From the IMG/VR virus record IMGVR_UViG_3300036766_000194, positions 1-64,000 of that record: a stretch of DNA of 64,000 nt; one strand, 5' to 3'. The notes under the pieces are model-generated. The model saw nothing but the letters and a program-made list of their open reading frames with translations. It was not told the DNA's origin and did not search any database. Below, piece by piece: positions 9,571-63,917 of the stretch (position 1 is the stretch's first letter; every line of letters begins with the position of its first letter). A program made the translations under genes and the position numbers.

Positions 9571-9641
9571 TGGGTCGTAGCTTAATGGTAGAGCAGCGGC
9601 GTTAAGCCGCTGGTGCGAGGTTCGACTCCTCGCCGACTGAA
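9571..9641 (+). pseudogene. Degenerate tRNA-Asn-derived gene (loop CGTTAAG)
   Basis: Good D and T arms. Anticodon loop lacks U33, acceptor stem is mismatched, no CCA. Confidence 0.65.
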
Positions 9642-30603: not shown

Positions 30604-31953
30604 GTGGCCGTGGACACAGAAACTGGTATGAAATTTTCTCCCAATAGGATTGATACCAACAAACCTCTCAAAGAGGGAGATAGAGTGACTGCGCCACTCG
30701 AAGTCATTAAGCAGTACGTGGAGAATCAGAAAATGTCTGACCAGAAGCGTGGCATAAAAGGACGAGTGTATTTGACACCAGAAGAGGTGTCTCCCGCTGC
30801 GCAAGCATTCGGCTGCGACCGCTTCGTCTATAACCACCTTTTGGAATTTGAGCAGAATAGGTATGCCACAGACCAGACCAAAACAAACAAGAAAGACAGG
30901 AACATCGAATTCAATCGTCTCAAGCAAGAATTTCCTTGGCTGTATGATGTCAACGCTCAGATGCTTCAGCAGTCCACGAGGAAACTGGATACAGCGTGGG
31001 ACAATTTCTTCGCCACCTGCAAAACAACGAAACATTGGAGACGCCCGAAGTTCAAAAAGAAAACGAACAGGCAGTCAGCACGGTTCACCAAAGGTTCATT
31101 CAAGTTCGAGAACGGCGTGCTCACCCTCTCCAAAATTGGAGACATCTCAATACCTTGGTATCGCCGAGTAAAAGGCGAGCCATCATCTGTCGTTCTTAGC
31201 ATGACGCCTTCGGGTCGATATTATGCGTCGTTTCAAGTCGAGCAGCCGTTGCGTGTAGTCGGCTCCGCAATCAATCAGGTTGCCTCAATTGACATCAACA
31301 CCAAGACTTTCAATTTCTTTAACGGCAGGACGTATTCGCATGTTGCTCTGCCCCGCCCGTTGCTCGGTGCTCTGTCGCGGCTCCGCACGGCACAGAAGCA
31401 CCTGAGCCGCTGCACCAAAGGCTCCAAGAATCGGGAGAAAGCCCGTCTCAAAGTCGCCAAGATTCACCAGCGGGTGTCAGACATCCGCACTGATTTTCTC
31501 CAGAAGTTAAGCACTCAACTTGTTCACGAGAACCAAGTGATAGTAGTTGAAACGCTTCGCACCAAGAACATGCTCAAGAATCGCCATCTGTCTCGTGCAA
31601 TTTCAGATGCAGGCTTCGGCGGCTTCCTCCGCATGTTGGAATACAAGTGCAAGTGGTATGGCAGAATGCTCGTCAAAGTAAACACGTTCTTCCCATCATC
31701 AAAGTTGTGCTGCATTTGTCGAGAGAAGAATGCAGACCTCAAACTCCAAGACCGCTGGCAGTGCCCGAATTGCAAGACGGAACACCAGCGAGACGAGAAT
31801 GCTGTCGTAAACATTTTCGTAGAGGGTTTGAGAATCTTAGCCGAGGGACGCTCGGTATCAGCCTGCGGAGGCACAGCAAGACCTAATCGCAAGATTAGGC
31901 GTGTGCCTGTGAAGCAGGAAACATCGTTGGAGACGAGCAGCAATGCTGCTTAG
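30604..31953 (+). CDS. tnpB: TnpB (IS200/IS605 RNA-guided nuclease) with N-terminal extension containing a TnpA tail
   Basis: FGCDRFVYN, P.FKKK, RuvC SID / VVETL / RDENA, Zn finger CCIC...CPNC. Typical TnpB body starts near ATG 30733. Confidence 0.92.
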   Translation: MAVDTETGMKFSPNRIDTNKPLKEGDRVTAPLEVIKQYVENQKMSDQKRGIKGRVYLTPEEVSPAAQAFGCDRFVYNHLLEFEQNRYATDQTKTNKKDRNIEFNRLKQEFPWLYDVNAQMLQQSTRKLDTAWDNFFATCKTTKHWRRPKFKKKTNRQSARFTKGSFKFENGVLTLSKIGDISIPWYRRVKGEPSSVVLSMTPSGRYYASFQVEQPLRVVGSAINQVASIDINTKTFNFFNGRTYSHVALPRPLLGALSRLRTAQKHLSRCTKGSKNREKARLKVAKIHQRVSDIRTDFLQKLSTQLVHENQVIVVETLRTKNMLKNRHLSRAISDAGFGGFLRMLEYKCKWYGRMLVKVNTFFPSSKLCCICREKNADLKLQDRWQCPNCKTEHQRDENAVVNIFVEGLRILAEGRSVSACGGTARPNRKIRRVPVKQETSLETSSNAA

Positions 31954-40458: not shown

Positions 40459-40611
40459 ATGCTCGTATTAAAAAGACCAATTAGGCCGTTGTGGCAGGCG
40501 CTGAGGTATCTAATTCCGCACCGTTTGACCATGTTTCATACGCCAACGATTTGGGCAATACTGTGGTGGAACTACTGGAATGAGCGAAAAGCTCTTTATC
40601 CACACAGTTAG
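40459..40611 (+). CDS. Small Trp-rich hypothetical protein (50 aa)
   Basis: RBS aaggag. Below the track cutoff. Confidence 0.5.
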   Translation: MLVLKRPIRPLWQALRYLIPHRLTMFHTPTIWAILWWNYWNERKALYPHS

Positions 40612-40655
40612 GGTTAGGGGAAGTTCAAGCTCAACTTGGACTTCCCGTATTAAAT

Positions 40656-40937
40656 TGCAGGGATAGGTATGGGGCGACAAAAGGGCAGCAAAACCATGCT
40701 GACTATAAATCGCCTGCCTTTTCGAGACGCCATAGCGCCTCGAAGGGAACCCAGCCTTTGATGGTTGGTCCTGCATGCGCACTTGAGCCGCTCTCCGGGA
40801 AGGCTCATGACGAAGAGAACTTCTTTCTTGAAGTTCTCTTCGACCCCGGTAAATTTTAAGGTGGCAGATCCGTCAAGATGTGAACGGCGACCGTTCCGGA
40901 TACTAATACCCAAAGGTCGAAAATCATGGGAGCCACC
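40656..40937 (+). ncRNA. Unassigned ~280-nt structured RNA
   Basis: tgcagg/cctgca, perfect 13-bp hairpin 40811-40842, ggtggc/gccacc. Preceded by CGTATTAA. Confidence 0.5.
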
Positions 40938-40944
40938 ATGAAAA

Positions 40945-41037
40945 TTGAACGTGCTGTGGTGTAATGGAGCACGCACGGTAGAATCCGTAATCCATCAGGG
41001 CTAAGAGGTCCCAGACGAGTCTGGGTAGCGCGTTCAA
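40945..41037 (+). ncRNA. tRNA-like RNA with an 11-bp closing stem
   Basis: ttgaacgtgct/agcgcgttcaa, D-arm-like gtggtgtaatggagcac, acgg/ccgt arm, cccaga/tctggg arm. Confidence 0.45.
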
Positions 41038-41067
41038 TACTTTTAAATAAAGAAATAGGAGACGACA

Positions 41068-41517: not shown

Positions 41518-41891
41518 TGTGATGGACTGGACTGTCGCTGGCGACTGCTAGAATGAGTTGCGGGAGGAAGTTCGGGGCAGCATCAGAGCAACGTGCCAGG
41601 TAATAACTGGGCATCGGAGAAATCCGATGACGGAAAGTGGAACAGAAAATAACCGCCACGGCGCAAGCCGGGGTAAGGGTGCAAAGGTAGGGTAAGAGCC
41701 TACCAGCACGGCGGTAACGTCGTGGCTGCTAAACCCCACGTGCTGCAATGCCAAATAAGGATGGGATGATCTGCTCGATCGTTTTTCTCATCCGGGTAGG
41801 CAGCTTGAGATCATAGGTGACTATGATCCTAGACGAATGACAGTCACTCAGCATGGGCTGATGACAGAACCCCGGCTATAGGTTCATCACA
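41518..41891 (+). ncRNA. rnpB: RNase P RNA (bacterial type A-like)
   Basis: P1 tgtgatggac/gttcatcaca. P4 halves GAGGAAGTTCGGGG and ACAGAACCCCGGCTA. Also GAAAGTGGAACAGAAA, GGTAAGAGC, GCTAAACCC and AGACGAATG conserved segments. Confidence 0.93.
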
Positions 41892-41892
41892 A

Positions 41893-42036
41893 ATGAAAAA
41901 TAGTCACAAACGTGAGTCTAAACAATTGGGAATAAATGTCCAAACGGCAACCAATCGTTTGGTTAGAATGCTGCTGTTCAAATTCGCCCTCGAAACAAAG
42001 AGGGAGAATTGGAATAAATTCCCAACGATTTGCTGA
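41893..42036 (+). pseudogene. Truncated HNH endonuclease-type N-terminus
   Basis: SKQLGINVQTATNRLVRMLLFKF resembles the start of phage HNH genes. ORF stops at 47 aa before any HNH motif. Confidence 0.45.
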
Positions 42037-42188: not shown

Positions 42189-42299
42189 CGCGGGGTGGAG
42201 CAGCCAGGTAGCTCGTTTGCCTCACGGAGAGGAATCCTAACGGGTTTCTCTTCGACCATAAGCAAAAGGTCGTCCGTTCAAATCGGACCCCCGCACCCA
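42189..42299 (+). tRNA. Initiator-type tRNA-fMet(CAT) interrupted by a 34-nt insert in the anticodon loop
   Basis: cgcggggtggagcagccaggtagctcg 5' half with C1:A72 mismatch. Removing 42223-42256 restores tttgc-ctcataa-gcaaa. CCA end. Confidence 0.9.
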
Positions 42300-42493: not shown

Positions 42494-42886
42494 ATGATGA
42501 CACATGCCGACTACGAAGCGCAACGCGCACTGCTCTATGACGACTACGAGGCGCAATGCGCACCGCTTTATGCCGACCACAAGGCGCAACTCGCACTGCT
42601 CGATGACGACCACTACGAAGCGAAACACGCACTCGATGACGACTACGAGACGCAACTCGCACTGCTCGATGACGACTACAAGGCGCAACGCGCACTCGAT
42701 GACGACTACGAGACGCAACTCGCACTGCTCGATGACGACTACGAAGCGAAACACGCACTGCTCTATGACGACTACAAGGCGCAACGCGCACCGATCGATG
42801 CCGACTACGAAGCGAAACGCGCACTGCTCGATGACGACTACGAGGCGCAACGATCAGTAATCGAAAATCCGTTCAAAGTTTCATGA
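42494..42886 (+). CDS. Acidic 11-aa (33-bp) tandem-repeat protein
   Basis: RBS aaggag. About 11 units of DYEAQRALLDD with point variants and 10/12-aa indel units. Confidence 0.8.
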   Translation: MMTHADYEAQRALLYDDYEAQCAPLYADHKAQLALLDDDHYEAKHALDDDYETQLALLDDDYKAQRALDDDYETQLALLDDDYEAKHALLYDDYKAQRAPIDADYEAKRALLDDDYEAQRSVIENPFKVS

Positions 42887-42924: not shown

Positions 42925-43002
42925 TGCGGGGATAGAGCAAAGGTAGCTCGGGAGTCTCATAAACTCCACGATGGCAGGTTTCGATACCGCCCCCCGCTAC
43001 CA
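42925..43002 (+). tRNA. Second fMet-like tRNA(CAT)
   Basis: ggagt-ctcataa-actcc arm, U1:U72 mismatch, irregular T-arm, CCA. Confidence 0.8.
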
Positions 43003-43076: not shown

Positions 43077-43252
43077 GTAACGTGGTCCTTGTTGGTGTCC
43101 GTCGGAAAGCTGCCTGGCTTAACGGCCTTGCCTAAGATTTACTAGTAATCCCCGACGAGTAGACGATAAGGAAAGAGCGGCGGCTATGAGACCGTGCAGC
43201 GAATCTGGGGAAGCACAGGGCCAGGGAAATAAATGCTGGCATACCACGTTAC
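43077..43252 (+). ncRNA. 176-nt rod-like RNA, 6S RNA-like architecture
   Basis: Perfect 10-bp closing stem gtaacgtggt/accacgttac, central asymmetric bubble, inner cctggc/gccagg. Confidence 0.5.
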
Positions 43253-43358: not shown

Positions 43359-43499
43359 ATGTCCACTCGTTTGACCTGCCCACGTTGTAGCGCAATAGCA
43401 AAAGATACCAGTAAAGAGCGGAAGCGTTTTTTGCTCAGACACTCAGTCTCTGGCCCATGTATTACTCCGGGCAGGAAGATTGTTCTTGAGAGTAATTAA
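43359..43499 (+). CDS. Small CxxC peptide (46 aa)
   Basis: RBS agga. MSTRLTCPRC. Confidence 0.45.
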   Translation: MSTRLTCPRCSAIAKDTSKERKRFLLRHSVSGPCITPGRKIVLESN

Positions 43500-43528
43500 G
43501 GTCTTATATGTCGGCTGAGACCGAACAG

Positions 43529-43534
43529 TATAAT
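43529..43534 (+). promoter_or_regulatory. Consensus -10 box TATAAT
   Basis: 7-8 nt upstream of the structured RNA starting near 43542. Confidence 0.6.
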
Positions 43535-43541
43535 AAGTGGT

Positions 43542-43736
43542 GGAGCTATATCCAACGGGAAACCGTTGAATTTATGGTCCTGCGTAACCGTTCACGCATG
43601 TAGTAGAGAACGGATGGCTGGACTATACCCAGGGAGTTCCCGTACACTCTGAAATGAATGGTACGGGTGGAAGGGTTCCGTTCCCTGGTGATGATTTAGA
43701 GCGGAAGGTGGCGGGTTGCGGCAATAGCCGTGTCTC
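43542..43736 (+). ncRNA. Unassigned ~200-nt pseudoknotted RNA with its own promoter and terminator
   Basis: ggag/ctcc closure, caacgg-GAAA-ccgttg, tgcgt/acgca with loop ccgttc complementary to downstream gaacgg, ccaggga/tccctgg, cccgtac/gtacggg. Confidence 0.6.
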
Positions 43737-43741
43737 CAAGA

Positions 43742-43786
43742 AAGGGAGGAACTTGGTAGGTGTCTAGTTCCTCCCTTTTTCTTTTT
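43742..43786 (+). terminator. Rho-independent terminator
   Basis: aagggaggaact...agttcctcccttttt followed by ctttttt. Confidence 0.88.
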
Positions 43787-43792
43787 AGGATT

Positions 43793-43956
43793 TCTCGGTT
43801 GTGGCGGAAAAGACGATTAATAAATAAAGACGCACCGGACTTAACACTCCGGGATTCTACGAGCTTACTGGTTTATGAGACCATCCGTACCCCGTGAGGG
43901 ATCGGGCGTAGGATTCAAGTCCAGGGTGGAGAATCGGGAATCCCTGGCAATCGAGA
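43793..43956 (+). ncRNA. 164-nt expanded tRNA-Leu(TAA)-like RNA
   Basis: tctcggttg/caatcgaga acceptor, Leu-type D arm gcgg...agacgc with expanded loop, ccgga-cttaacac-tccgg (8-nt loop), branched variable arm, enlarged T-loop, no CCA. Confidence 0.7.
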
Positions 43957-44008
43957 ATAATTTTCAACTATAGACCTTCATACAGTCCAACAAAATTTTG
44001 GAGACTGT

Positions 44009-44296
44009 ATGCATAATAGAGAATGTTGTGGTTGTGAGAATGAAGTTCCTCAGCAGCAATGTAGTTGTAAATGTCATCGTCAATACGATTGTGAATATTG
44101 GGAGACTCTAGCATTTATTTGGATATGTGATGCTCCCGACGAATTCCGTCGTGAAGACGCCTGGCATAGATTTTGTCAAGCCTTCCCTGAATATGGGCAT
44201 GAAACTCATCATGAGTTTTGGAACCGTATTCTCCGCACTAAGTGGTATCATAAACAGGGACATCACCATCATCGAGGACATCAGCACGATTACTAA
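44009..44296 (+). CDS. Cys/His-rich small protein
   Basis: RBS ggag. CCGC...CSCKC and C-terminal GHHHHRGHQH. Confidence 0.65.
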   Translation: MHNRECCGCENEVPQQQCSCKCHRQYDCEYWETLAFIWICDAPDEFRREDAWHRFCQAFPEYGHETHHEFWNRILRTKWYHKQGHHHHRGHQHDY

Positions 44297-44339
44297 TTTC
44301 AACCCCATTACATAAGTTCTGCGCGATAAGAACACGGAG

Positions 44340-45410
44340 GTGGTAGAAATGCCAAGACCCCCTGTTCGCCAGAAGCTCAACCCCGCCGCTCGTTCAGATG
44401 AAACGAGAGAATTTGGGGAGAATTTACGAGCCAAAATAGTTGGACAAGATGAAGGTGTTAAAGCACTTACGGACATCTACCAGGTATTCTGCGCTGGACT
44501 TAACTCACCAAATCGTCCTGTGGGAAATTTCCTATTCCTCGGTCCTACGGGTTCTGGTAAAACACGCATAGTAGAAGCTGCGGCTGAAATACTCTTTGGG
44601 GATCCTCGTGCGGTTATAAAAGTAGACTGCGCGGAATTCCAACACTCTCACGAAATTGCAAAATTAATCGGTTCTCCTCCAGGGTACCTAGGACATAAGG
44701 AGACTCATCCTCTTATCACGCAAGAAGCACTAGCTCAATATCATAAAGATGAGTTAAAATTATCCTTTCTTCTTTTTGATGAAATAGAAAAGGCTAGTGA
44801 CTCCCTGTGGCAATTGTTACTAGGAGTAATGGATAAAGCCACCTTGACTTTAGGAGACAACCGTAGAGTGGATCTTTCTGGTACCATAATATTTCTAACT
44901 TCAAATCTAGGTGGAGGAAGAATCTCTGAACTTATGAATGGTGGCATGGGATTTGTTCAATCGTCTGATACTAACCTGGACAATAAAATAGACTCCGCTG
45001 CTGTAGACGCGGCTAGACGAAATTTTTCTCCTGAGTTTATGAATCGTCTTGATAGAGTGGTCGTATTTCATCCACTAACTCGCATACAACTAGATGATAT
45101 TCTTAGTATTGAATTGGATCATGTACAACAAAGAATATTGGGCACGGCCAAGGGGCAATTCTTGTTACAAGTCACCCGGTCCGCCCGTGATCTTATTTTG
45201 AGAGAAGGTACTGACAGCCGCTTTGGGGCTAGACATTTAAAGAGAGCTATTGAACGTCTCTTAGTTCATTCCATAGCAAACCTCTTGTCCACTGAACAAT
45301 TAAAAGCAGGAGATGTTCTCTGTATAGATTGGGATCGTAAAAGTGATGATTTATTTTTTACACGTGAGGAACATAACGTATTAGTCAATCCAGAACAGCA
45401 TGATTTCTAA
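44340..45410 (+). CDS. ClpA/ClpB-type AAA+ ATPase, D2 domain only
   Basis: IVGQD, FLFLGPTGSGKT, KLIGSPPGYLG, LFDEIEKA, FLTSNLG, PEFMNRLD, GARHLKRAI. Confidence 0.9.
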   Translation: MVEMPRPPVRQKLNPAARSDETREFGENLRAKIVGQDEGVKALTDIYQVFCAGLNSPNRPVGNFLFLGPTGSGKTRIVEAAAEILFGDPRAVIKVDCAEFQHSHEIAKLIGSPPGYLGHKETHPLITQEALAQYHKDELKLSFLLFDEIEKASDSLWQLLLGVMDKATLTLGDNRRVDLSGTIIFLTSNLGGGRISELMNGGMGFVQSSDTNLDNKIDSAAVDAARRNFSPEFMNRLDRVVVFHPLTRIQLDDILSIELDHVQQRILGTAKGQFLLQVTRSARDLILREGTDSRFGARHLKRAIERLLVHSIANLLSTEQLKAGDVLCIDWDRKSDDLFFTREEHNVLVNPEQHDF

Positions 45411-59541: not shown

Positions 59542-59697
59542 AAATCATAGATCTATCAGGACAACAATAAAGGCTACACAAAAGAAAACTGCACTGTTTG
59601 CTGTAAAACTTGCAACTATGCCAAAGGGAATCGTTATACCTTTGAAGAATGGGTTGCAATGACAAAAGCACTTCGAAAAGTAAGATCCAAGTTTTGA
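59538..59697 (+). pseudogene. Internally deleted HNH endonuclease remnant
   Basis: MKIIDLSGQ start joined out of frame to DNNKGYTKENCTVCCKTCNYAKG. Confidence 0.65.
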
Positions 59698-59738
59698 GCA
59701 GTATAAAGGAAGTCAGGATTTCAGGACCTTTGCAAATC

Positions 59739-62700
59739 ATGTCGAAAACCTACGGAACACTAGAATACGACAAGAAGAAACGGGTCTTCCTGATTGAGTG
59801 TGCTCCTCATGTTGCTATTAGGGTCAAGCGCGTATTCGCTAAGATAAACACTTACGAGTATGGTAAGCTGAAGTTATCTGCTACTCCTGAGAACGCCAGG
59901 GATCTTGAATGGTTCCTGGAACGCTATCCCATGGAAGTAAAGCACCCAGAAATTCTTAAGGAACTCGCCACCCAACAAAAAGAACGCGCCATCCTAGTTG
60001 AACAACTTTTGAATGGATATTCTGCTCGCCAATTCCCCTTGAAACTTCCAGCCCGAGACTATCAATCCTTGGCTGCTAATATGTGGTTAGTAGCAGGAGG
60101 ACTCCTTCTAGCGGACGATGTGGGTCTCGGGAAGGCTCAGACCCTTTCCGCTAAGATCCTCACTCCTACGGGATGGACTACCATGGGAGAAATTAAAGTG
60201 GGTGACGCCGTAGTCGATCCCGACGGCGGCATAGGGTATGTAGAGGGGGTGTATCCTCAAGGAGAGAAGGAAATCTTCCTCATGACAACTTCTGATGGGG
60301 TGGAAGTTGAGTGTTGTGACGAGCACTTGTGGTGGGTCCAAACTCACAATGACCGAATGCGTAATAGTTCGCGTGTTGTACCTTTGAAGGATTTTCGTAA
60401 TGATTTGTTTGGAAAGGAACACGATAGTTGCTGGCACGCCAAATGGTTTATTCCAGTAGTTCAACCTCTTGTTATGCAAAGAATTGAGTTTTCCTTTCCT
60501 CCCTACCTTTTGGGATGTCTTTTAGGAGACGGTTCCCTTAGGAACAGCATACAAACGTTGACCTGTTCGGAGTCTCAGATTATAGAAAAGATAAAGAAAT
60601 CACTTCCTTTGGATTTGCGGGTTAAGAATGCTAGCAACCCCATAGAATGGTCTTTTCCTAGAAAAATCTATAGCAACAAGCCGCACCCCTTTACAGTCCA
60701 ACTGCGCAAATGGGGTCTTTGGACAAAATACTCCTACGAAAAGTGGATCCCTCTCGATTGTTTCTTTTGGTCAGTGGAACATCGTATTGAACTTCTTCGT
60801 GGCTTAATGGATACCGATGGAGAATGTGGCAAATCCTATGGTGCGTATTTCTCTTCTACCTCTAAGCAACTCGCTGATGGATTGGCGGACTTAGTTCGTT
60901 CCTTGGGGGGACTAGCTAAAGTTAAGTATGTAGGGAAGGGAAACTATCGAAAGGAAGATGGTACTGTAAAGGTGTGTAGGGATTCTTGGAATGTCTCTGT
61001 TCAAACTTTATTTGTGCCTTTTCATTTGAAAAGAAAAACTGAACGTTGGCACAAGCCTAATATGGCTAGAGCGATAAAGAAAGTGGAGTCAATTGGTTAC
61101 AAAATCGCCAAATGTATCAAAGTTTCTACTAAGCGTCATTTATACATTACGGATGGATATCTTCCAACTCACAACACTTGCACAGCCATCGCAGGACTCA
61201 CGGACTCTAGGCTCCTCCCTTCCTTAATCGTATGTCCCACCCACTTACCCCCTCAATGGGAGAATGAGGTTCATAAGTTCACCGATCTTACGGTCCATCG
61301 TCTTCGTCAAGCCACTCCTTATGACATCACCAAATATACCAACGGTATATTCCCCGACGTGATAATTTCCAACTATCATAAATTGTCAGGATGGGCTGAG
61401 ACAATTGCTCCCTGCGTCAAGAGCATCATTTTCGATGAAGTTCAAGACTTACGTCATACAGGTTCTAACAAATATATGGCAGCTAAACACATAGCGGATT
61501 CATGTGAGTGGCGTCTGGGCCTCAGTGTGGGACCAGATTCTTTGTTGCTATTACGGGGTGGCCCCTTTGGGGGTGGGTGGCAGGGGACTATAGAACAGGC
61601 TTATCAGATGGTTTTAACTTCATCCAGGGTGATCTTGGAAGGTGGGTATAGTCTCCTACCTGTGAAACACTCGAATATAGAAAGTCGCGGTTGGGAACAA
61701 GATGGCTTTTGTTGGAAAACAGTTAAGACATTTATACGGCATAAGTGTGACAAGCCAGTCCGAGAAATAGAAGTAAGAGGTTCTCGTCTTCTCCTCACCG
61801 ATGATCACTCCTTGTTCAAAATTACTAAGGGGAAGATAGCATGTGTATCCAGTGAGCAGTTGAAACTTCATGACTGTTTGCCTTTGGATAATGGAAAGAA
61901 TTGGGAAATCGGGGCAAATAAAGAAGTCGTGTTAGATATTGCTTCTATCATAGATCCTCATAAAAAGGTTCAAGTCTTGGTGGACATTTCTGGTTTAACT
62001 CGTAAGGAGGTAGGTGTAAATCCTCAAAACTGGTATAATTTTAAGAAAGAAAGGAAATTTGGACCAAGAATACCGCTTAGATATTTTCTAACCCATCGTC
62101 GTAAATTACCAGCACCGCAAGGTTTATATTTTAGCCAAACTAGAGGCAAGGCTAGAGTGATTGGGAATCTGACTTTGCGGCTTAGTAATTGGGCCTATGT
62201 TTTGGGATTCTTTTTAGGGGCTGGTTGGCTTAATAGGGATAGCCGAGGTGTTATTACGAGTGTCAGCTTTTCTGTGGATGCACCTCATTACAAAAAATTG
62301 TGCACTGCCTTGGGAGCCATTAAAGAAACACCCCTGCGTATCCGAGAACGCTTCAGCACAGTTGCAATGGTTGAGATTGAGTGCGATAACAAATTCTTCG
62401 CAGAAATTTTGGCTTACGTTTTCAAGGGGGCAAAGAAATGTTGGGAAAAAGAACTTCCTACAGAATGGACAACTACTTGGTCCAGGAAAGCTCGTGAACA
62501 GCTATTGGAAGGACTTAGAGATTCAGACGGCGTAGCAGCTGGTTCTAATCCAACTACTAGTAGTGCCTATACAACCACTTCTCTGGCTTTAGCAAAATCA
62601 ATTCTTCTCTTGCTGAGGAGTCTAGGTATATCGGGGAGTTACAGTGAACACTCTCCGAGTCTTGGGGGGTGGGTTAAGGAAAAGGACGGTTCATTACGTC

Positions 62701-63917
62701 AGATACAAGGTAAAAGAATTTCCTACATAATTGGGTGGAGTGTTGGAACGGGTCATTGGGGTTCGGCTTTGCCCTATAAATCCCCCGAATTGTGGAATCA
62801 AGCCCCAATACATAGGATTAAGGATGTCGTTCCGCCATCACATGTATACGATTTAGAAATGGAAGGTCATCCTTCTTTTTGCCTTGAAGGAATTGGTATG
62901 CTAGGAAAAAATTCCGCGACTCCAATTTACAACTATGGAGGAGAGATGTTTAACGTTCTAGATGTTCTCTATCCAGGTTGCCTAGGAACTTGGGATGAAT
63001 TTAGCCGCGAGTGGGTTGCTTATGCTTTTGGGGATAAACCCAAGATAAAGGATCCTAAAGCGTTTGGTGTTTATACTCGTGAAGCTGGACTCATGCTACG
63101 TCGGACCCGTATAGAGGTACGCCGCGAATTGCCTGAGGTTACGGTCGTCCCACACAGCATTGATTGTGACACGGCCATCCTTGACAAGATGAAGGGCAAG
63201 GCTATTGAGCTTGCCAAACTGATCCTTGCGCAGAAGCAAGATTTTCGTGGGCAAAAGATGCAAGCTGCTGGAGAATTTGATTTGCGTATGCGTCAAGCTA
63301 CAGGTATTGCCAAGGCTCCCTATGTTTGCGAATTTGTAAAATTCTTGATACAAGAGAGTAACGAACCTATTGTATTGTTCGGATGGCACAGGGAAGTTTA
63401 CGAGATCTATCTAGAAAAATTGAAAGAGTTTAATCCTGTGATGTATACAGGGAGTGAGACAGCTGTACAAAAGGAAGAGTCTAAGCAGAAATTTATCAAA
63501 GGTCAGAGTAAGGTTATGATAATCAGCCTCCGCTCTGGGGCGGGGCTGGATGGTTTACAGGATATTTGTCACATCGCGGTATTCGGAGAGTTAGACTGGT
63601 CAAATTCTGTTCATACTCAGTGTGTGGGTCGTATTCATAGAGATGGTCAGGATGAACCTGTCATCGCCTATTATTTGCTGAGTACTGATGGCTGTGATCC
63701 TATTATGTGCGATGTCTTAGGGATCAAACGGCAGCAATCTGAAGGCATATTAAATCCGTTAGGTGAGTTCGTAGGAGAAAACATAATACGGGAGCAGTAT
63801 ATAAGGGACCTAGCCGCCGATTTTTTGACGAAACAGGGAGTTGACGTTGAGAAGATTGAAAAACCCAAAGAAATCTCTGAAACACAAGTTTCCTCAGATA
63901 GCCCAGGAATGGCATGA
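59739..63917 (+). CDS. SNF2-family helicase with two inteins
   Basis: LADDVGLGK|T, FDEVQ, LGL|SATP, GAGLDGL, Q.VGRIHR.GQ. Start placed at ATG 59739. Confidence 0.9.
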   Translation: MSKTYGTLEYDKKKRVFLIECAPHVAIRVKRVFAKINTYEYGKLKLSATPENARDLEWFLERYPMEVKHPEILKELATQQKERAILVEQLLNGYSARQFPLKLPARDYQSLAANMWLVAGGLLLADDVGLGKAQTLSAKILTPTGWTTMGEIKVGDAVVDPDGGIGYVEGVYPQGEKEIFLMTTSDGVEVECCDEHLWWVQTHNDRMRNSSRVVPLKDFRNDLFGKEHDSCWHAKWFIPVVQPLVMQRIEFSFPPYLLGCLLGDGSLRNSIQTLTCSESQIIEKIKKSLPLDLRVKNASNPIEWSFPRKIYSNKPHPFTVQLRKWGLWTKYSYEKWIPLDCFFWSVEHRIELLRGLMDTDGECGKSYGAYFSSTSKQLADGLADLVRSLGGLAKVKYVGKGNYRKEDGTVKVCRDSWNVSVQTLFVPFHLKRKTERWHKPNMARAIKKVESIGYKIAKCIKVSTKRHLYITDGYLPTHNTCTAIAGLTDSRLLPSLIVCPTHLPPQWENEVHKFTDLTVHRLRQATPYDITKYTNGIFPDVIISNYHKLSGWAETIAPCVKSIIFDEVQDLRHTGSNKYMAAKHIADSCEWRLGLSVGPDSLLLLRGGPFGGGWQGTIEQAYQMVLTSSRVILEGGYSLLPVKHSNIESRGWEQDGFCWKTVKTFIRHKCDKPVREIEVRGSRLLLTDDHSLFKITKGKIACVSSEQLKLHDCLPLDNGKNWEIGANKEVVLDIASIIDPHKKVQVLVDISGLTRKEVGVNPQNWYNFKKERKFGPRIPLRYFLTHRRKLPAPQGLYFSQTRGKARVIGNLTLRLSNWAYVLGFFLGAGWLNRDSRGVITSVSFSVDAPHYKKLCTALGAIKETPLRIRERFSTVAMVEIECDNKFFAEILAYVFKGAKKCWEKELPTEWTTTWSRKAREQLLEGLRDSDGVAAGSNPTTSSAYTTTSLALAKSILLLLRSLGISGSYSEHSPSLGGWVKEKDGSLRQIQGKRISYIIGWSVGTGHWGSALPYKSPELWNQAPIHRIKDVVPPSHVYDLEMEGHPSFCLEGIGMLGKNSATPIYNYGGEMFNVLDVLYPGCLGTWDEFSREWVAYAFGDKPKIKDPKAFGVYTREAGLMLRRTRIEVRRELPEVTVVPHSIDCDTAILDKMKGKAIELAKLILAQKQDFRGQKMQAAGEFDLRMRQATGIAKAPYVCEFVKFLIQESNEPIVLFGWHREVYEIYLEKLKEFNPVMYTGSETAVQKEESKQKFIKGQSKVMIISLRSGAGLDGLQDICHIAVFGELDWSNSVHTQCVGRIHRDGQDEPVIAYYLLSTDGCDPIMCDVLGIKRQQSEGILNPLGEFVGENIIREQYIRDLAADFLTKQGVDVEKIEKPKEISETQVSSDSPGMA
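60135..61175 (+). mobile_element. Class 3 intein (Ala1) with LAGLIDADG endonuclease (347 aa)
   Basis: Starts AQTL. WCT signature: EHLW, block F KCI, PTHN then Thr+1. LGCLLGDG and LRGLMDTDG. Confidence 0.88.
61524..62912 (+). mobile_element. Ser1 intein with degenerate LAGLIDADG domain (463 aa)
   Basis: Starts SVGPDS, block B TDDH, block F VYDLE, ends GKN then Ser+1. Motifs LGFFLGAG and LEGLRDSDG. Confidence 0.85.

What the first reader, a model, noticed from the sequence alone, without database searches (positions are those of the whole stretch)
43529..43786. Stand-alone pseudoknotted ncRNA gene with consensus promoter and terminator
Seen: TATAAT, then about 200 nt of nested stems with an H-type pseudoknot candidate (loop ccgttc with gaacgg), then a strong intrinsic terminator, with no ORF. 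Complete expression signals make it the best-supported independent ncRNA here. I recognise no known family.
Basis: partly seen in the sequence, partly recalled or inferred. Interest (0 to 1): 0.72.

Follow-up and report, generated by a model that had tools for sequence, protein, structure and literature searches.

The report
Orphan structured RNA before phage terminator
A 250-base non-coding stretch at the end of a jumbo phage's cluster of RNA genes folds into several hairpins and ends in a strong transcription terminator. Its 'consensus promoter' and 'pseudoknot' do not hold up and no relative was found, so it is at best a lineage-specific small RNA of unproven function.

Summary
The window is the first 64 kb of a 299,875-bp jumbo phage from sediment metagenomes. 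Positions 43529-43790 lie at the 3' end of a + strand 'RNA island' that holds tRNAs and an RNase P RNA.

**Confirmed:**
- There is no ORF and no Rfam match.
- A very strong intrinsic terminator sits at 43739-43790.
- About 200 nt of hairpins precede it.

**Not confirmed:**
- The 'consensus promoter' is a lone TATAAT with no -35 element. TATAAT is not enriched in this phage's non-coding DNA.
- The 'pseudoknot' (ccgttc/gaacgg) is an ordinary nested stem with pair probability 1.0.
- The fold of the body is only modestly better than chance: z about -2, the 8th percentile of random genome windows.

**Homologues:** none was found. I searched phage GenBank records, IMG/VR word scans, 23 viral records including about 11 clade relatives, their RNA islands with filters off, and 151 Acidobacteriota genomes. 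The same relatives do keep RNase P RNA, tmRNA and tRNAs. Covariation therefore cannot be tested, and no RNA-seq run was listed.

**Best reading (0.4):** a lineage-specific, terminator-capped small structured RNA. It may be made from its own weak promoter or cut out of the island transcript. **Main rival (0.3):** it is only the 3' trailer and terminator of that transcript. Interest is low to moderate.

The parts
43529..43534 (+). TATAAT hexamer, a possible -10 element. It has no -35 and no TG extension.
   Evidence: Read directly. Not called by the promoter scan. TATAAT is not enriched in non-coding DNA of this phage.
43541..43738 (+). Structured body of about 198 nt, closed by P1 (43541-43545 with 43734-43738)
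   Evidence: Folds. P1 pair probability is 0.65.
43553..43568 (+). P2: 6-bp hairpin with a GAAA tetraloop
   Evidence: pair probability 0.97.
43573..43627 (+). P3: long hairpin. Outer stem 43573-43580/43620-43627. 14-nt loop.
   Evidence: pair probabilities 0.97-1.0.
43629..43688 (+). P4: three-way junction. Closing stem 43629-43635/43682-43688, P4a 43639-43645/43661-43667, P4b 43669-43671/43677-43679. Competes with an alternative long hairpin used by the MFE fold.
   Evidence: probability about 0.7 for P4 against about 0.25 for the alternative.
43689..43717 (+). Purine-rich linker of about 29 nt, predicted single-stranded. AUUUAGAG (43694-43701) is complementary to CUCUGAAAU in the P4a loop (43647-43655), which makes an untested loop-linker pseudoknot candidate.
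   Evidence: Centroid fold. Duplex energy -8.8 kcal/mol.
43718..43731 (+). P5: 5-bp hairpin with an AAUA loop
   Evidence: pair probability 0.82.
43739..43790 (+). Intrinsic terminator: 15-bp stem (43739-43753 / 43766-43780), 12-nt loop, U-tract
   Evidence: I5; pair probability 0.92.

Best explanation
A lineage-specific small structured RNA of about 200-250 nt forms the last unit of the phage's + strand RNA-gene island. That island runs from four tRNA-Pro genes through an RNA-ligase-like ORF, tRNA-Met, RNase P RNA, an intron-bearing tRNA and a second tRNA-Met to this element.

Proposed working: RNA polymerase moving rightwards on the + strand transcribes the segment and stops at the 15-bp hairpin plus U-tract at 43739-43790. 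This step rests on sequence only. The 5' end arises either by initiation about 7 nt after the lone TATAAT, or by nuclease processing of a longer island transcript downstream of tRNA-Met 42926-42998; this is inferred. The terminator hairpin stacked directly on the closing helix P1 would protect the 3' end. The product would be a compact RNA with a GNRA hairpin, a long hairpin, a three-way junction and a 29-nt purine-rich single-stranded linker, which is the most likely contact surface for a protein or RNA partner; this is also inferred.

It would act in trans as a stable RNA, like the small stable RNAs of unknown function in the T4 tRNA cluster. It would not act as a pseudoknotted ribozyme or riboswitch.
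For: The stretch is non-coding. It lies in a 5-kb island where every recognised RNA gene is on the + strand. G+C is 0.49-0.51 against 0.43 for the genome. P2, P3 and the terminator are well defined. The raw MFE is in the top 2% of genome windows. Three G-U pairs and the U-tract favour the + strand. The strong terminator is rare in this genome. No Rfam family explains it. The sequence is identical in contigs from three samples (X1, X2 and Ga0315268).
Against: The z-score of the body is only about -2, the 8th percentile of random windows. P4 is ambiguous between two folds. The promoter is only a chance-level hexamer. No homologue was found in clade relatives that do conserve RNase P RNA, tmRNA and tRNAs, so there is no covariation. 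No transcript evidence was available.
Confidence: 0.4

Rival explanations
1. It is merely the 3' trailer plus terminator of the upstream transcription unit (tRNA-Met 42926-42998, the small ORF 43359-43499, or the whole RNA island). The hairpins are incidental or serve only as 3' stabilisers, and there is no separate gene.
For: This is the only strong + strand terminator between about 23.1 kb and 61.5 kb. There is no real promoter. The fold significance is modest. It is not conserved in relatives. The 46-aa ORF with an AGGA ribosome-binding site ends 30 nt upstream.
Against: A trailer has no need for 200 nt of G+C-enriched sequence with three high-probability helices. Phage intergenic DNA is usually A+T-rich and short (general knowledge).
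Confidence: 0.3
2. It is a cis-acting leader (attenuator, riboswitch or antitermination element) that controls read-through into the downstream 95-aa ORF and the ClpB-D2-like AAA gene (44009-45410).
For: The terminator sits 220 nt upstream of a + strand operon with no recognisable promoter between them. GAACGGA can pair either with CCGUUC copy 1 or with UCCGUUC copy 2. P4's 3' strand resembles the terminator's 3' arm and can pair with the terminator's 5' arm as 10 bp with a 2-nt bulge. A 31-codon ORF (43508-43603) with tandem Trp codons runs through P1-P3.
Against: The forced antiterminator costs 13 kcal/mol (-83.1 against -96.3). It is not chosen in folds of the nascent transcript. No riboswitch or T-box family matches. 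The bacterial homologues of the AAA gene have no related leader.
Confidence: 0.1
3. It is non-functional filler or the decayed remnant of an older RNA gene (tRNA or tmRNA fragment), and its residual hairpins are chance.
For: It is an orphan in every search. Its z lies at the 8th percentile. A T-arm-like hairpin (43673-43687) yields only a very poor pseudo-tRNA call at aragorn's 80% threshold. The island holds other odd RNA relics, such as a tRNA with a 34-nt insert.
Against: No tRNA or tmRNA model matches even at E<=10. The phage keeps a separate tmRNA at 234 kb. The element is retained unchanged in all samples, although those are near-clonal.
Confidence: 0.15
4. The functional strand is the minus strand, giving an antisense RNA.
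For: The minus-strand fold has the stronger z-score: -5.5 against -2.2.
Against: The z difference follows from the C/A-rich composition of that strand. The + strand has the lower MFE, three extra G-U pairs and the proper U-tract. All neighbouring RNA genes are on the + strand.
Confidence: 0.05

Closest known systems
Small stable RNAs of the phage T4 tRNA gene cluster (species 1 / species 2 RNAs; from my own knowledge)
   Same: A phage-encoded, non-coding, structured RNA of one to two hundred nucleotides, sitting among tRNA genes on the same strand, possibly cut from a polycistronic precursor, with function unknown.
   Different: No sequence match to any GenBank phage, T4 included. Here there is a dedicated strong terminator. 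Processing was not shown.
Rho-independent terminators and terminator-capped / 3'-UTR-derived bacterial sRNAs
   Same: A G+C-rich 15-bp hairpin plus U-tract at the 3' end, with the body upstream of it.
   Different: The body is longer and more branched than typical base-pairing sRNAs. No Hfq-type seed or target was identified.
Terminator/antiterminator leaders (riboswitches, T-box, trp-type attenuators)
   Same: A structured region followed by a terminator upstream of an operon, with some alternative pairings available.
   Different: No family match. The antiterminator is 13 kcal/mol worse than the terminator. The terminator lies 220 nt from the start codon.
phi29 pRNA (RF00044), and the GOLLD and ROOL RNAs of phages (both in Rfam)
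   Same: Phage-borne structured RNAs. pRNA has a three-way junction and its own terminator. GOLLD and ROOL sit next to tRNAs.
   Different: No Rfam hit at E<=10. The size is wrong for GOLLD or ROOL. The phage is not phi29-like.
tmRNA and Y-RNA-like YrlA
   Same: Translation- or RNA-quality-control RNAs carried by phages near tRNAs.
   Different: The phage's tmRNA is elsewhere, at 234274-234654. No Ro/TROVE or RtcB gene is present. No model match.

Membership tests
Intrinsic (Rho-independent) terminator | G+C-rich hairpin immediately followed by a U-tract on the transcribed strand | tested here: met
   15-bp stem 43739-43753/43766-43780 followed by TTCTTTTT. Pair probability 0.92.
Sigma-70 consensus promoter | -35 TTGACA-like hexamer 16-18 nt upstream of TATAAT, or a TG-extended -10 | tested here: not met
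   At most 1 of 6 matches at any spacing and no TG extension. The scan calls nothing on the + strand. TATAAT is at chance frequency in non-coding DNA.
H-type pseudoknot | Loop of a hairpin pairs with sequence outside that hairpin while the hairpin stays formed | tested here: not met
   The named ccgttc/gaacgg pair is itself the nested inner stem of P3 (probability 1.0). A different loop-linker candidate (43647-43655 with 43694-43701) exists, but cannot be tested without homologues.
Any Rfam 15 family (4227 models, including riboswitches, T-box, 6S, SRP, tmRNA, YrlA, pRNA, GOLLD, ROOL, raiA) | Covariance-model score at or near the gathering threshold | tested here: not met
   No hit for the body even at E<=10 on a 281-nt query. 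Only noise hits on the terminator hairpin.
Conserved structured ncRNA (generic criterion) | Homologues with helix-preserving covariation | tested here: inconclusive
   No homologue was found. The only other copies are 100% identical. Control: the phage's RNase P RNA finds all five relatives by nhmmer.
Independent transcription unit | A discrete transcript with mapped 5' and 3' ends | not testable with these tools
   No RNA run could be listed. The three DNA runs only show presence.
tRNA / tRNA-like element | Cloverleaf with a canonical T-loop and acceptor stem | tested here: not met
   aragorn and Rfam tRNA models find nothing at normal thresholds. There is only a very poor call at the 80% threshold.

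The most novel reading that the evidence does not exclude
The element is a functional structured ncRNA of a new family, carried by a huge phage alongside its own RNase P RNA, tmRNA and about 47 tRNAs. It would act in trans on the host's or the phage's translation or RNA-processing machinery, with the purine-rich linker and a loop-linker pseudoknot as its active surface.
Probability: 0.12. Interest if true: 0.55.

Novelty: new member of a known kind. Interest (0 to 1): 0.25.

Why it matters
If it is real, it would add an uncharacterised RNA to the RNA toolkit that huge phages carry (tRNAs, tmRNA and, in this clade, RNase P RNA). It would also mark the 'RNA island' as a place to look for more. 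As it stands, it is a single-genome orphan with modest structural statistics and no expression or covariation evidence, so it changes little by itself. The more remarkable observations are its neighbours: a clade-conserved phage RNase P RNA and a tRNA with a 34-nt intron.

Tried and rejected
1. **Rfam.** Searched at gathering threshold and at E<=10 on 2.6-kb and 281-nt queries. Only terminator noise came back.
2. **tmRNA idea** (the neighbour is a Clp-type ATPase). Rejected, because aragorn finds the phage's permuted tmRNA at 234 kb and no tmRNA model matches here.
3. **Y RNA (YrlA).** No Ro/TROVE or RtcB gene is present.
4. **Synteny through the ClpB-D2-like gene**. That gene is a recent import from Acidobacteriota at about 75% amino-acid identity, and its neighbours elsewhere are unrelated.
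5. **A 17.5-bit match of model R1 in contig G009**. It lies inside a 578-aa ORF, so it is a false positive.
6. **Clade relatives.** Found via the portal protein (54-58% identity) and via the RNA-ligase-like ORF (58-84% identity). R1, BLAST and nhmmer found nothing in whole records or in their RNA islands.
7. **Exact 19-25-mer scans of IMG/VR**: no match.
8. **The 137-aa neighbour in metagenome contigs**: no relative.
9. **Host-derived RNA.** R1 over 5 plus 151 Acidobacteriota genomes gave only chance-level hits.
10. **Population variation.** X1 and X2 contigs are identical across the element.
11. **Stop-codon recoding**, suggested by the suppressor tRNA. TAA is the commonest stop of long ORFs, and no long frame appears.
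12. **A shared phage promoter motif upstream of RNA genes.** None was found.
13. **Paralogues in the phage.** None.

Full report
**Context.** The window is bases 1-64000 of a 299,875-bp IMG/VR virus record with direct terminal repeats, judged 100% complete. It is a jumbo phage. Its DNA occurs in three sediment metagenome runs and in contigs from four or five samples.

The genome has 43.4% G+C. It carries about 47 tRNA genes, including a UUA-anticodon suppressor and a tRNA-SeC, plus a permuted tmRNA at 234 kb. Within the window, Rfam finds a full-length class-A RNase P RNA at 41519-41894 with 255 bits.

The finding lies at the right-hand end of a + strand 'RNA island' spanning about 38.7-43.8 kb. 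In order, the island holds four tRNA-Pro genes, an RNA-ligase-like ORF, tRNA-Met, about 450 nt of unexplained structured DNA, a 137-aa ORF, RNase P RNA, an intron-bearing tRNA, a repeat-rich ORF, a second tRNA-Met, a 46-aa ORF, and then the candidate. Downstream on the same strand are a 95-aa Cys/His-rich ORF (44009-44296) and a ClpB-D2-like AAA ATPase (44340-45410).

**Checking the observation: what holds.** TATAAT is at 43529-43534. The stretch has no ORF above 37 aa. Recoding any one stop codon does not create a credible gene, and TAA, the codon the suppressor tRNA would read, is the commonest stop of long ORFs. Three independent gene callers leave the region empty.

The terminator is real. 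It has a 15-bp stem (43739-43753 / 43766-43780), a 12-nt loop and then TTCTTTTT. My own scan found only 48 terminator-like hairpins in 300 kb. This is the only strong one on the + strand between 23 kb and 61 kb.

**The fold** (pair probabilities in brackets):
- P1: 43541-43545 / 43734-43738 (0.65).
- P2: a GAAA-tetraloop hairpin at 43553-43568 (0.97).
- P3: a long hairpin at 43573-43627 (0.97-1.0).
- P4: a three-way junction at 43629-43688 (about 0.7). It competes with an alternative long hairpin that the MFE fold uses (about 0.25).
- Linker: 29 nt, purine-rich and unpaired.
- P5: 43718-43731 (0.82).
- Terminator: directly abuts P1.

**Checking the observation: what does not hold.**
- *Promoter.* There is no -35 element and no extended -10, and the sigma-70 scan reports nothing on the + strand. 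TATAAT occurs 171 times in the genome. Twenty copies lie in the 10.9% that is non-coding, as chance predicts. I found no promoter motif shared with the other RNA genes.
A second CCGUUC at 43678-43683 offers a mutually exclusive alternative, which is not a pseudoknot. A different loop-linker pairing (CUCUGAAAU at 43647-43655 with AUUUAGAG at 43694-43701, -8.8 kcal/mol) is possible but untestable here.
- *Statistics.* The body alone gives z = -2.24, with 4 of 200 shuffles folding as well. With the terminator z = -3.59. Among 160 random 205-nt windows of the same genome, 8% have an equal or better z and 2% an equal or lower MFE.
- *Strand.* The minus strand gives a stronger z of -5.5. This reflects its C/A-rich composition. 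The + strand has the lower energy, three extra G-U pairs and the U-tract, and all neighbouring RNA genes are on the + strand.

**Search for relatives.**
- *Direct sequence searches.* There was no match among GenBank phages and no second copy in the phage. Exact 19-25-mers found nothing in IMG/VR.
- *Covariance model R1.* I built R1 from the sequence and the centroid fold. It scores 271 bits on itself and on an identical copy from another sample. It found nothing credible in 12 viral records reached through the AAA gene. One 17.5-bit hit there lies inside a 578-aa ORF.
- *The AAA gene.* It proved to be a recent import. Thousands of cellular proteins, mostly from Acidobacteriota (Acidoferrales, Acidiferrum), are 72-76% identical to it. 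Their loci show no related RNA.
- *True relatives.* These came from the portal protein (54-58% identity; contigs up to 456 kb) and from the RNA-ligase-like ORF (58-84% identity). R1 on their whole records, R1 with filters off on their RNA islands, BLAST and nhmmer all gave nothing.
- *Sensitivity control.* A single-sequence nhmmer search with this phage's RNase P RNA finds all five relatives' RNase P genes, with E from 5e-13 to 9e-4. The method therefore works at this distance for a highly constrained RNA. A less constrained 200-nt RNA could still escape it.
- *Host-derived RNA.* R1 over 5 plus 151 Acidobacteriota genomes gave only chance-level hits: the best per-genome E was 0.016 across 151 genomes.
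- *Population and expression data.* Contigs from runs X1 and X2 are identical over the element. No RNA run could be listed.
- *Outcome.* Covariation and expression therefore remain untested.

**Interpretation.** The solid parts are a non-coding, G+C-enriched segment (0.49-0.51 against 0.43) with three well-defined helices, and a strong + strand terminator at the end of an RNA-gene island.

I consider it most likely (0.4) that this yields a terminator-capped, lineage-specific small structured RNA. It would either start after the weak -10 element or be cut from the island transcript. It would resemble the small stable RNAs in the T4 tRNA cluster (from my own knowledge), with the unpaired purine-rich linker as the probable interaction surface.

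Almost as likely (0.3), it is only the 3' trailer and terminator of the upstream unit.

A regulatory leader for the downstream ORF95 and AAA operon is possible (0.1). Alternative pairings exist, and a 31-codon ORF with tandem Trp codons runs through P1-P3. However, the antiterminator is 13 kcal/mol worse than the terminator and does not appear in folds of the nascent chain.

Filler or a decayed remnant (0.15) and a minus-strand RNA (0.05) complete the list.

**Comparison and novelty.** The element fails every Rfam membership test. It fails the tests for a consensus promoter and for the named pseudoknot. It passes only the test for an intrinsic terminator. If it is real, it is a new, orphan member of a known kind: phage small RNAs embedded in tRNA clusters. 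Without homologues or transcripts, the claim stays weak and interest is low to moderate.

**Side observations.** The surroundings are more striking than the target.
- RNase P RNA is conserved in this huge-phage clade. It scored above the Rfam cut-off in 5 of the 9 related records tested. The jumbo-phage papers that headed my two literature searches do not mention RNase P.
- A tRNA at 42189-42299 carries a 34-nt insertion in the anticodon loop.

Noticed in passing
window 41519-41894 (+); relatives L054-L057, L079: A full-length class-A RNase P RNA (255 bits) is encoded by the phage. Of the 9 related huge-phage records tested, found via the portal or the RNA-ligase-like ORF, 5 also carry one (167-208 bits), four of them next to tRNA clusters and two of those also next to a tmRNA. 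The jumbo- and huge-phage papers that ranked highest in two literature searches contain no mention of RNase P.
   Followed up: partly
window 42189-42299 (+): A tRNA gene interrupted by a 34-nt insertion in the anticodon loop. Only aragorn's intron mode calls it, as tRNA-Val(CAC). A one-base shift of the junction would give CAU (Met). Its 5' half and T-arm resemble bacterial tRNA-Met/fMet. The insert forms a 7-bp hairpin. It is far too short for a group I intron.
   Followed up: partly
window 40600-41060 (+): About 450 nt with no credible ORF, G+C of 0.48-0.54 and several long perfect hairpins (z -3 to -4 on both strands), between tRNA-Met and the 137-aa ORF. No Rfam match at E<=5. It may be another unknown RNA.
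   Followed up: partly
window 43170-43245 (+); L071 459-538: A roughly 75-nt element is conserved (89% over its 45-nt core) with a short metagenome contig of a related phage, where it sits between tRNAs and the RNA-ligase-like gene. One hairpin pair changes A-U to G-C. nhmmer E = 9e-8. No other copy was found, including by an IMG/VR word scan.
   Followed up: partly
window 43800-43960 (+): Just after the terminator there is a second hairpin-rich stretch. It contains CCAGGG...CCCUGG with a GGGUGGAG motif resembling P4 of the candidate, and on the minus strand a CUCAUAA loop like a tRNA-Met anticodon arm. No tRNA model matches.
   Followed up: no
window 9571-9641; genome 234274-234654 (-) and 239973-240046 (-): A suppressor tRNA with anticodon UUA, a permuted (two-piece type) tmRNA and a tRNA-SeC are present in the phage. 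TAA is nevertheless the commonest stop codon of long ORFs, so global TAA recoding is unlikely.
   Followed up: partly
window 42494-42886 (+): A 130-aa ORF is built of eleven 33-nt tandem repeats (acidic 11-residue units). Its copy number and indels differ between samples: a 120-nt skip and 3-nt indels in runs X1 and X2, and a 91-aa version in another contig.
   Followed up: no
window 44340-45410 (+): A single-module ClpB-D2-like AAA ATPase is 72-76% identical to a 387-aa protein found in hundreds of Acidobacteriota (Acidoferrales, Acidiferrum) genomes. There it sits as a tandem pair next to an M48 peptidase. This suggests a recent host-to-phage transfer and an acidobacterial host.
   Followed up: partly
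window 59649-63917 (+): A 1422-aa helicase/primase-like ORF aligns end to end (residues 29-1404) with relatives whose matching stretch is only about 567 codons. This suggests large insertions (inteins?) in this phage's copy.
   Followed up: no
window 30604-31953 (+): A transposase-like ORF (phrog_506, annotated 'transposase', E = 7.5e-109) lies inside the phage genome. I did not look for an associated guide RNA.
   Followed up: no
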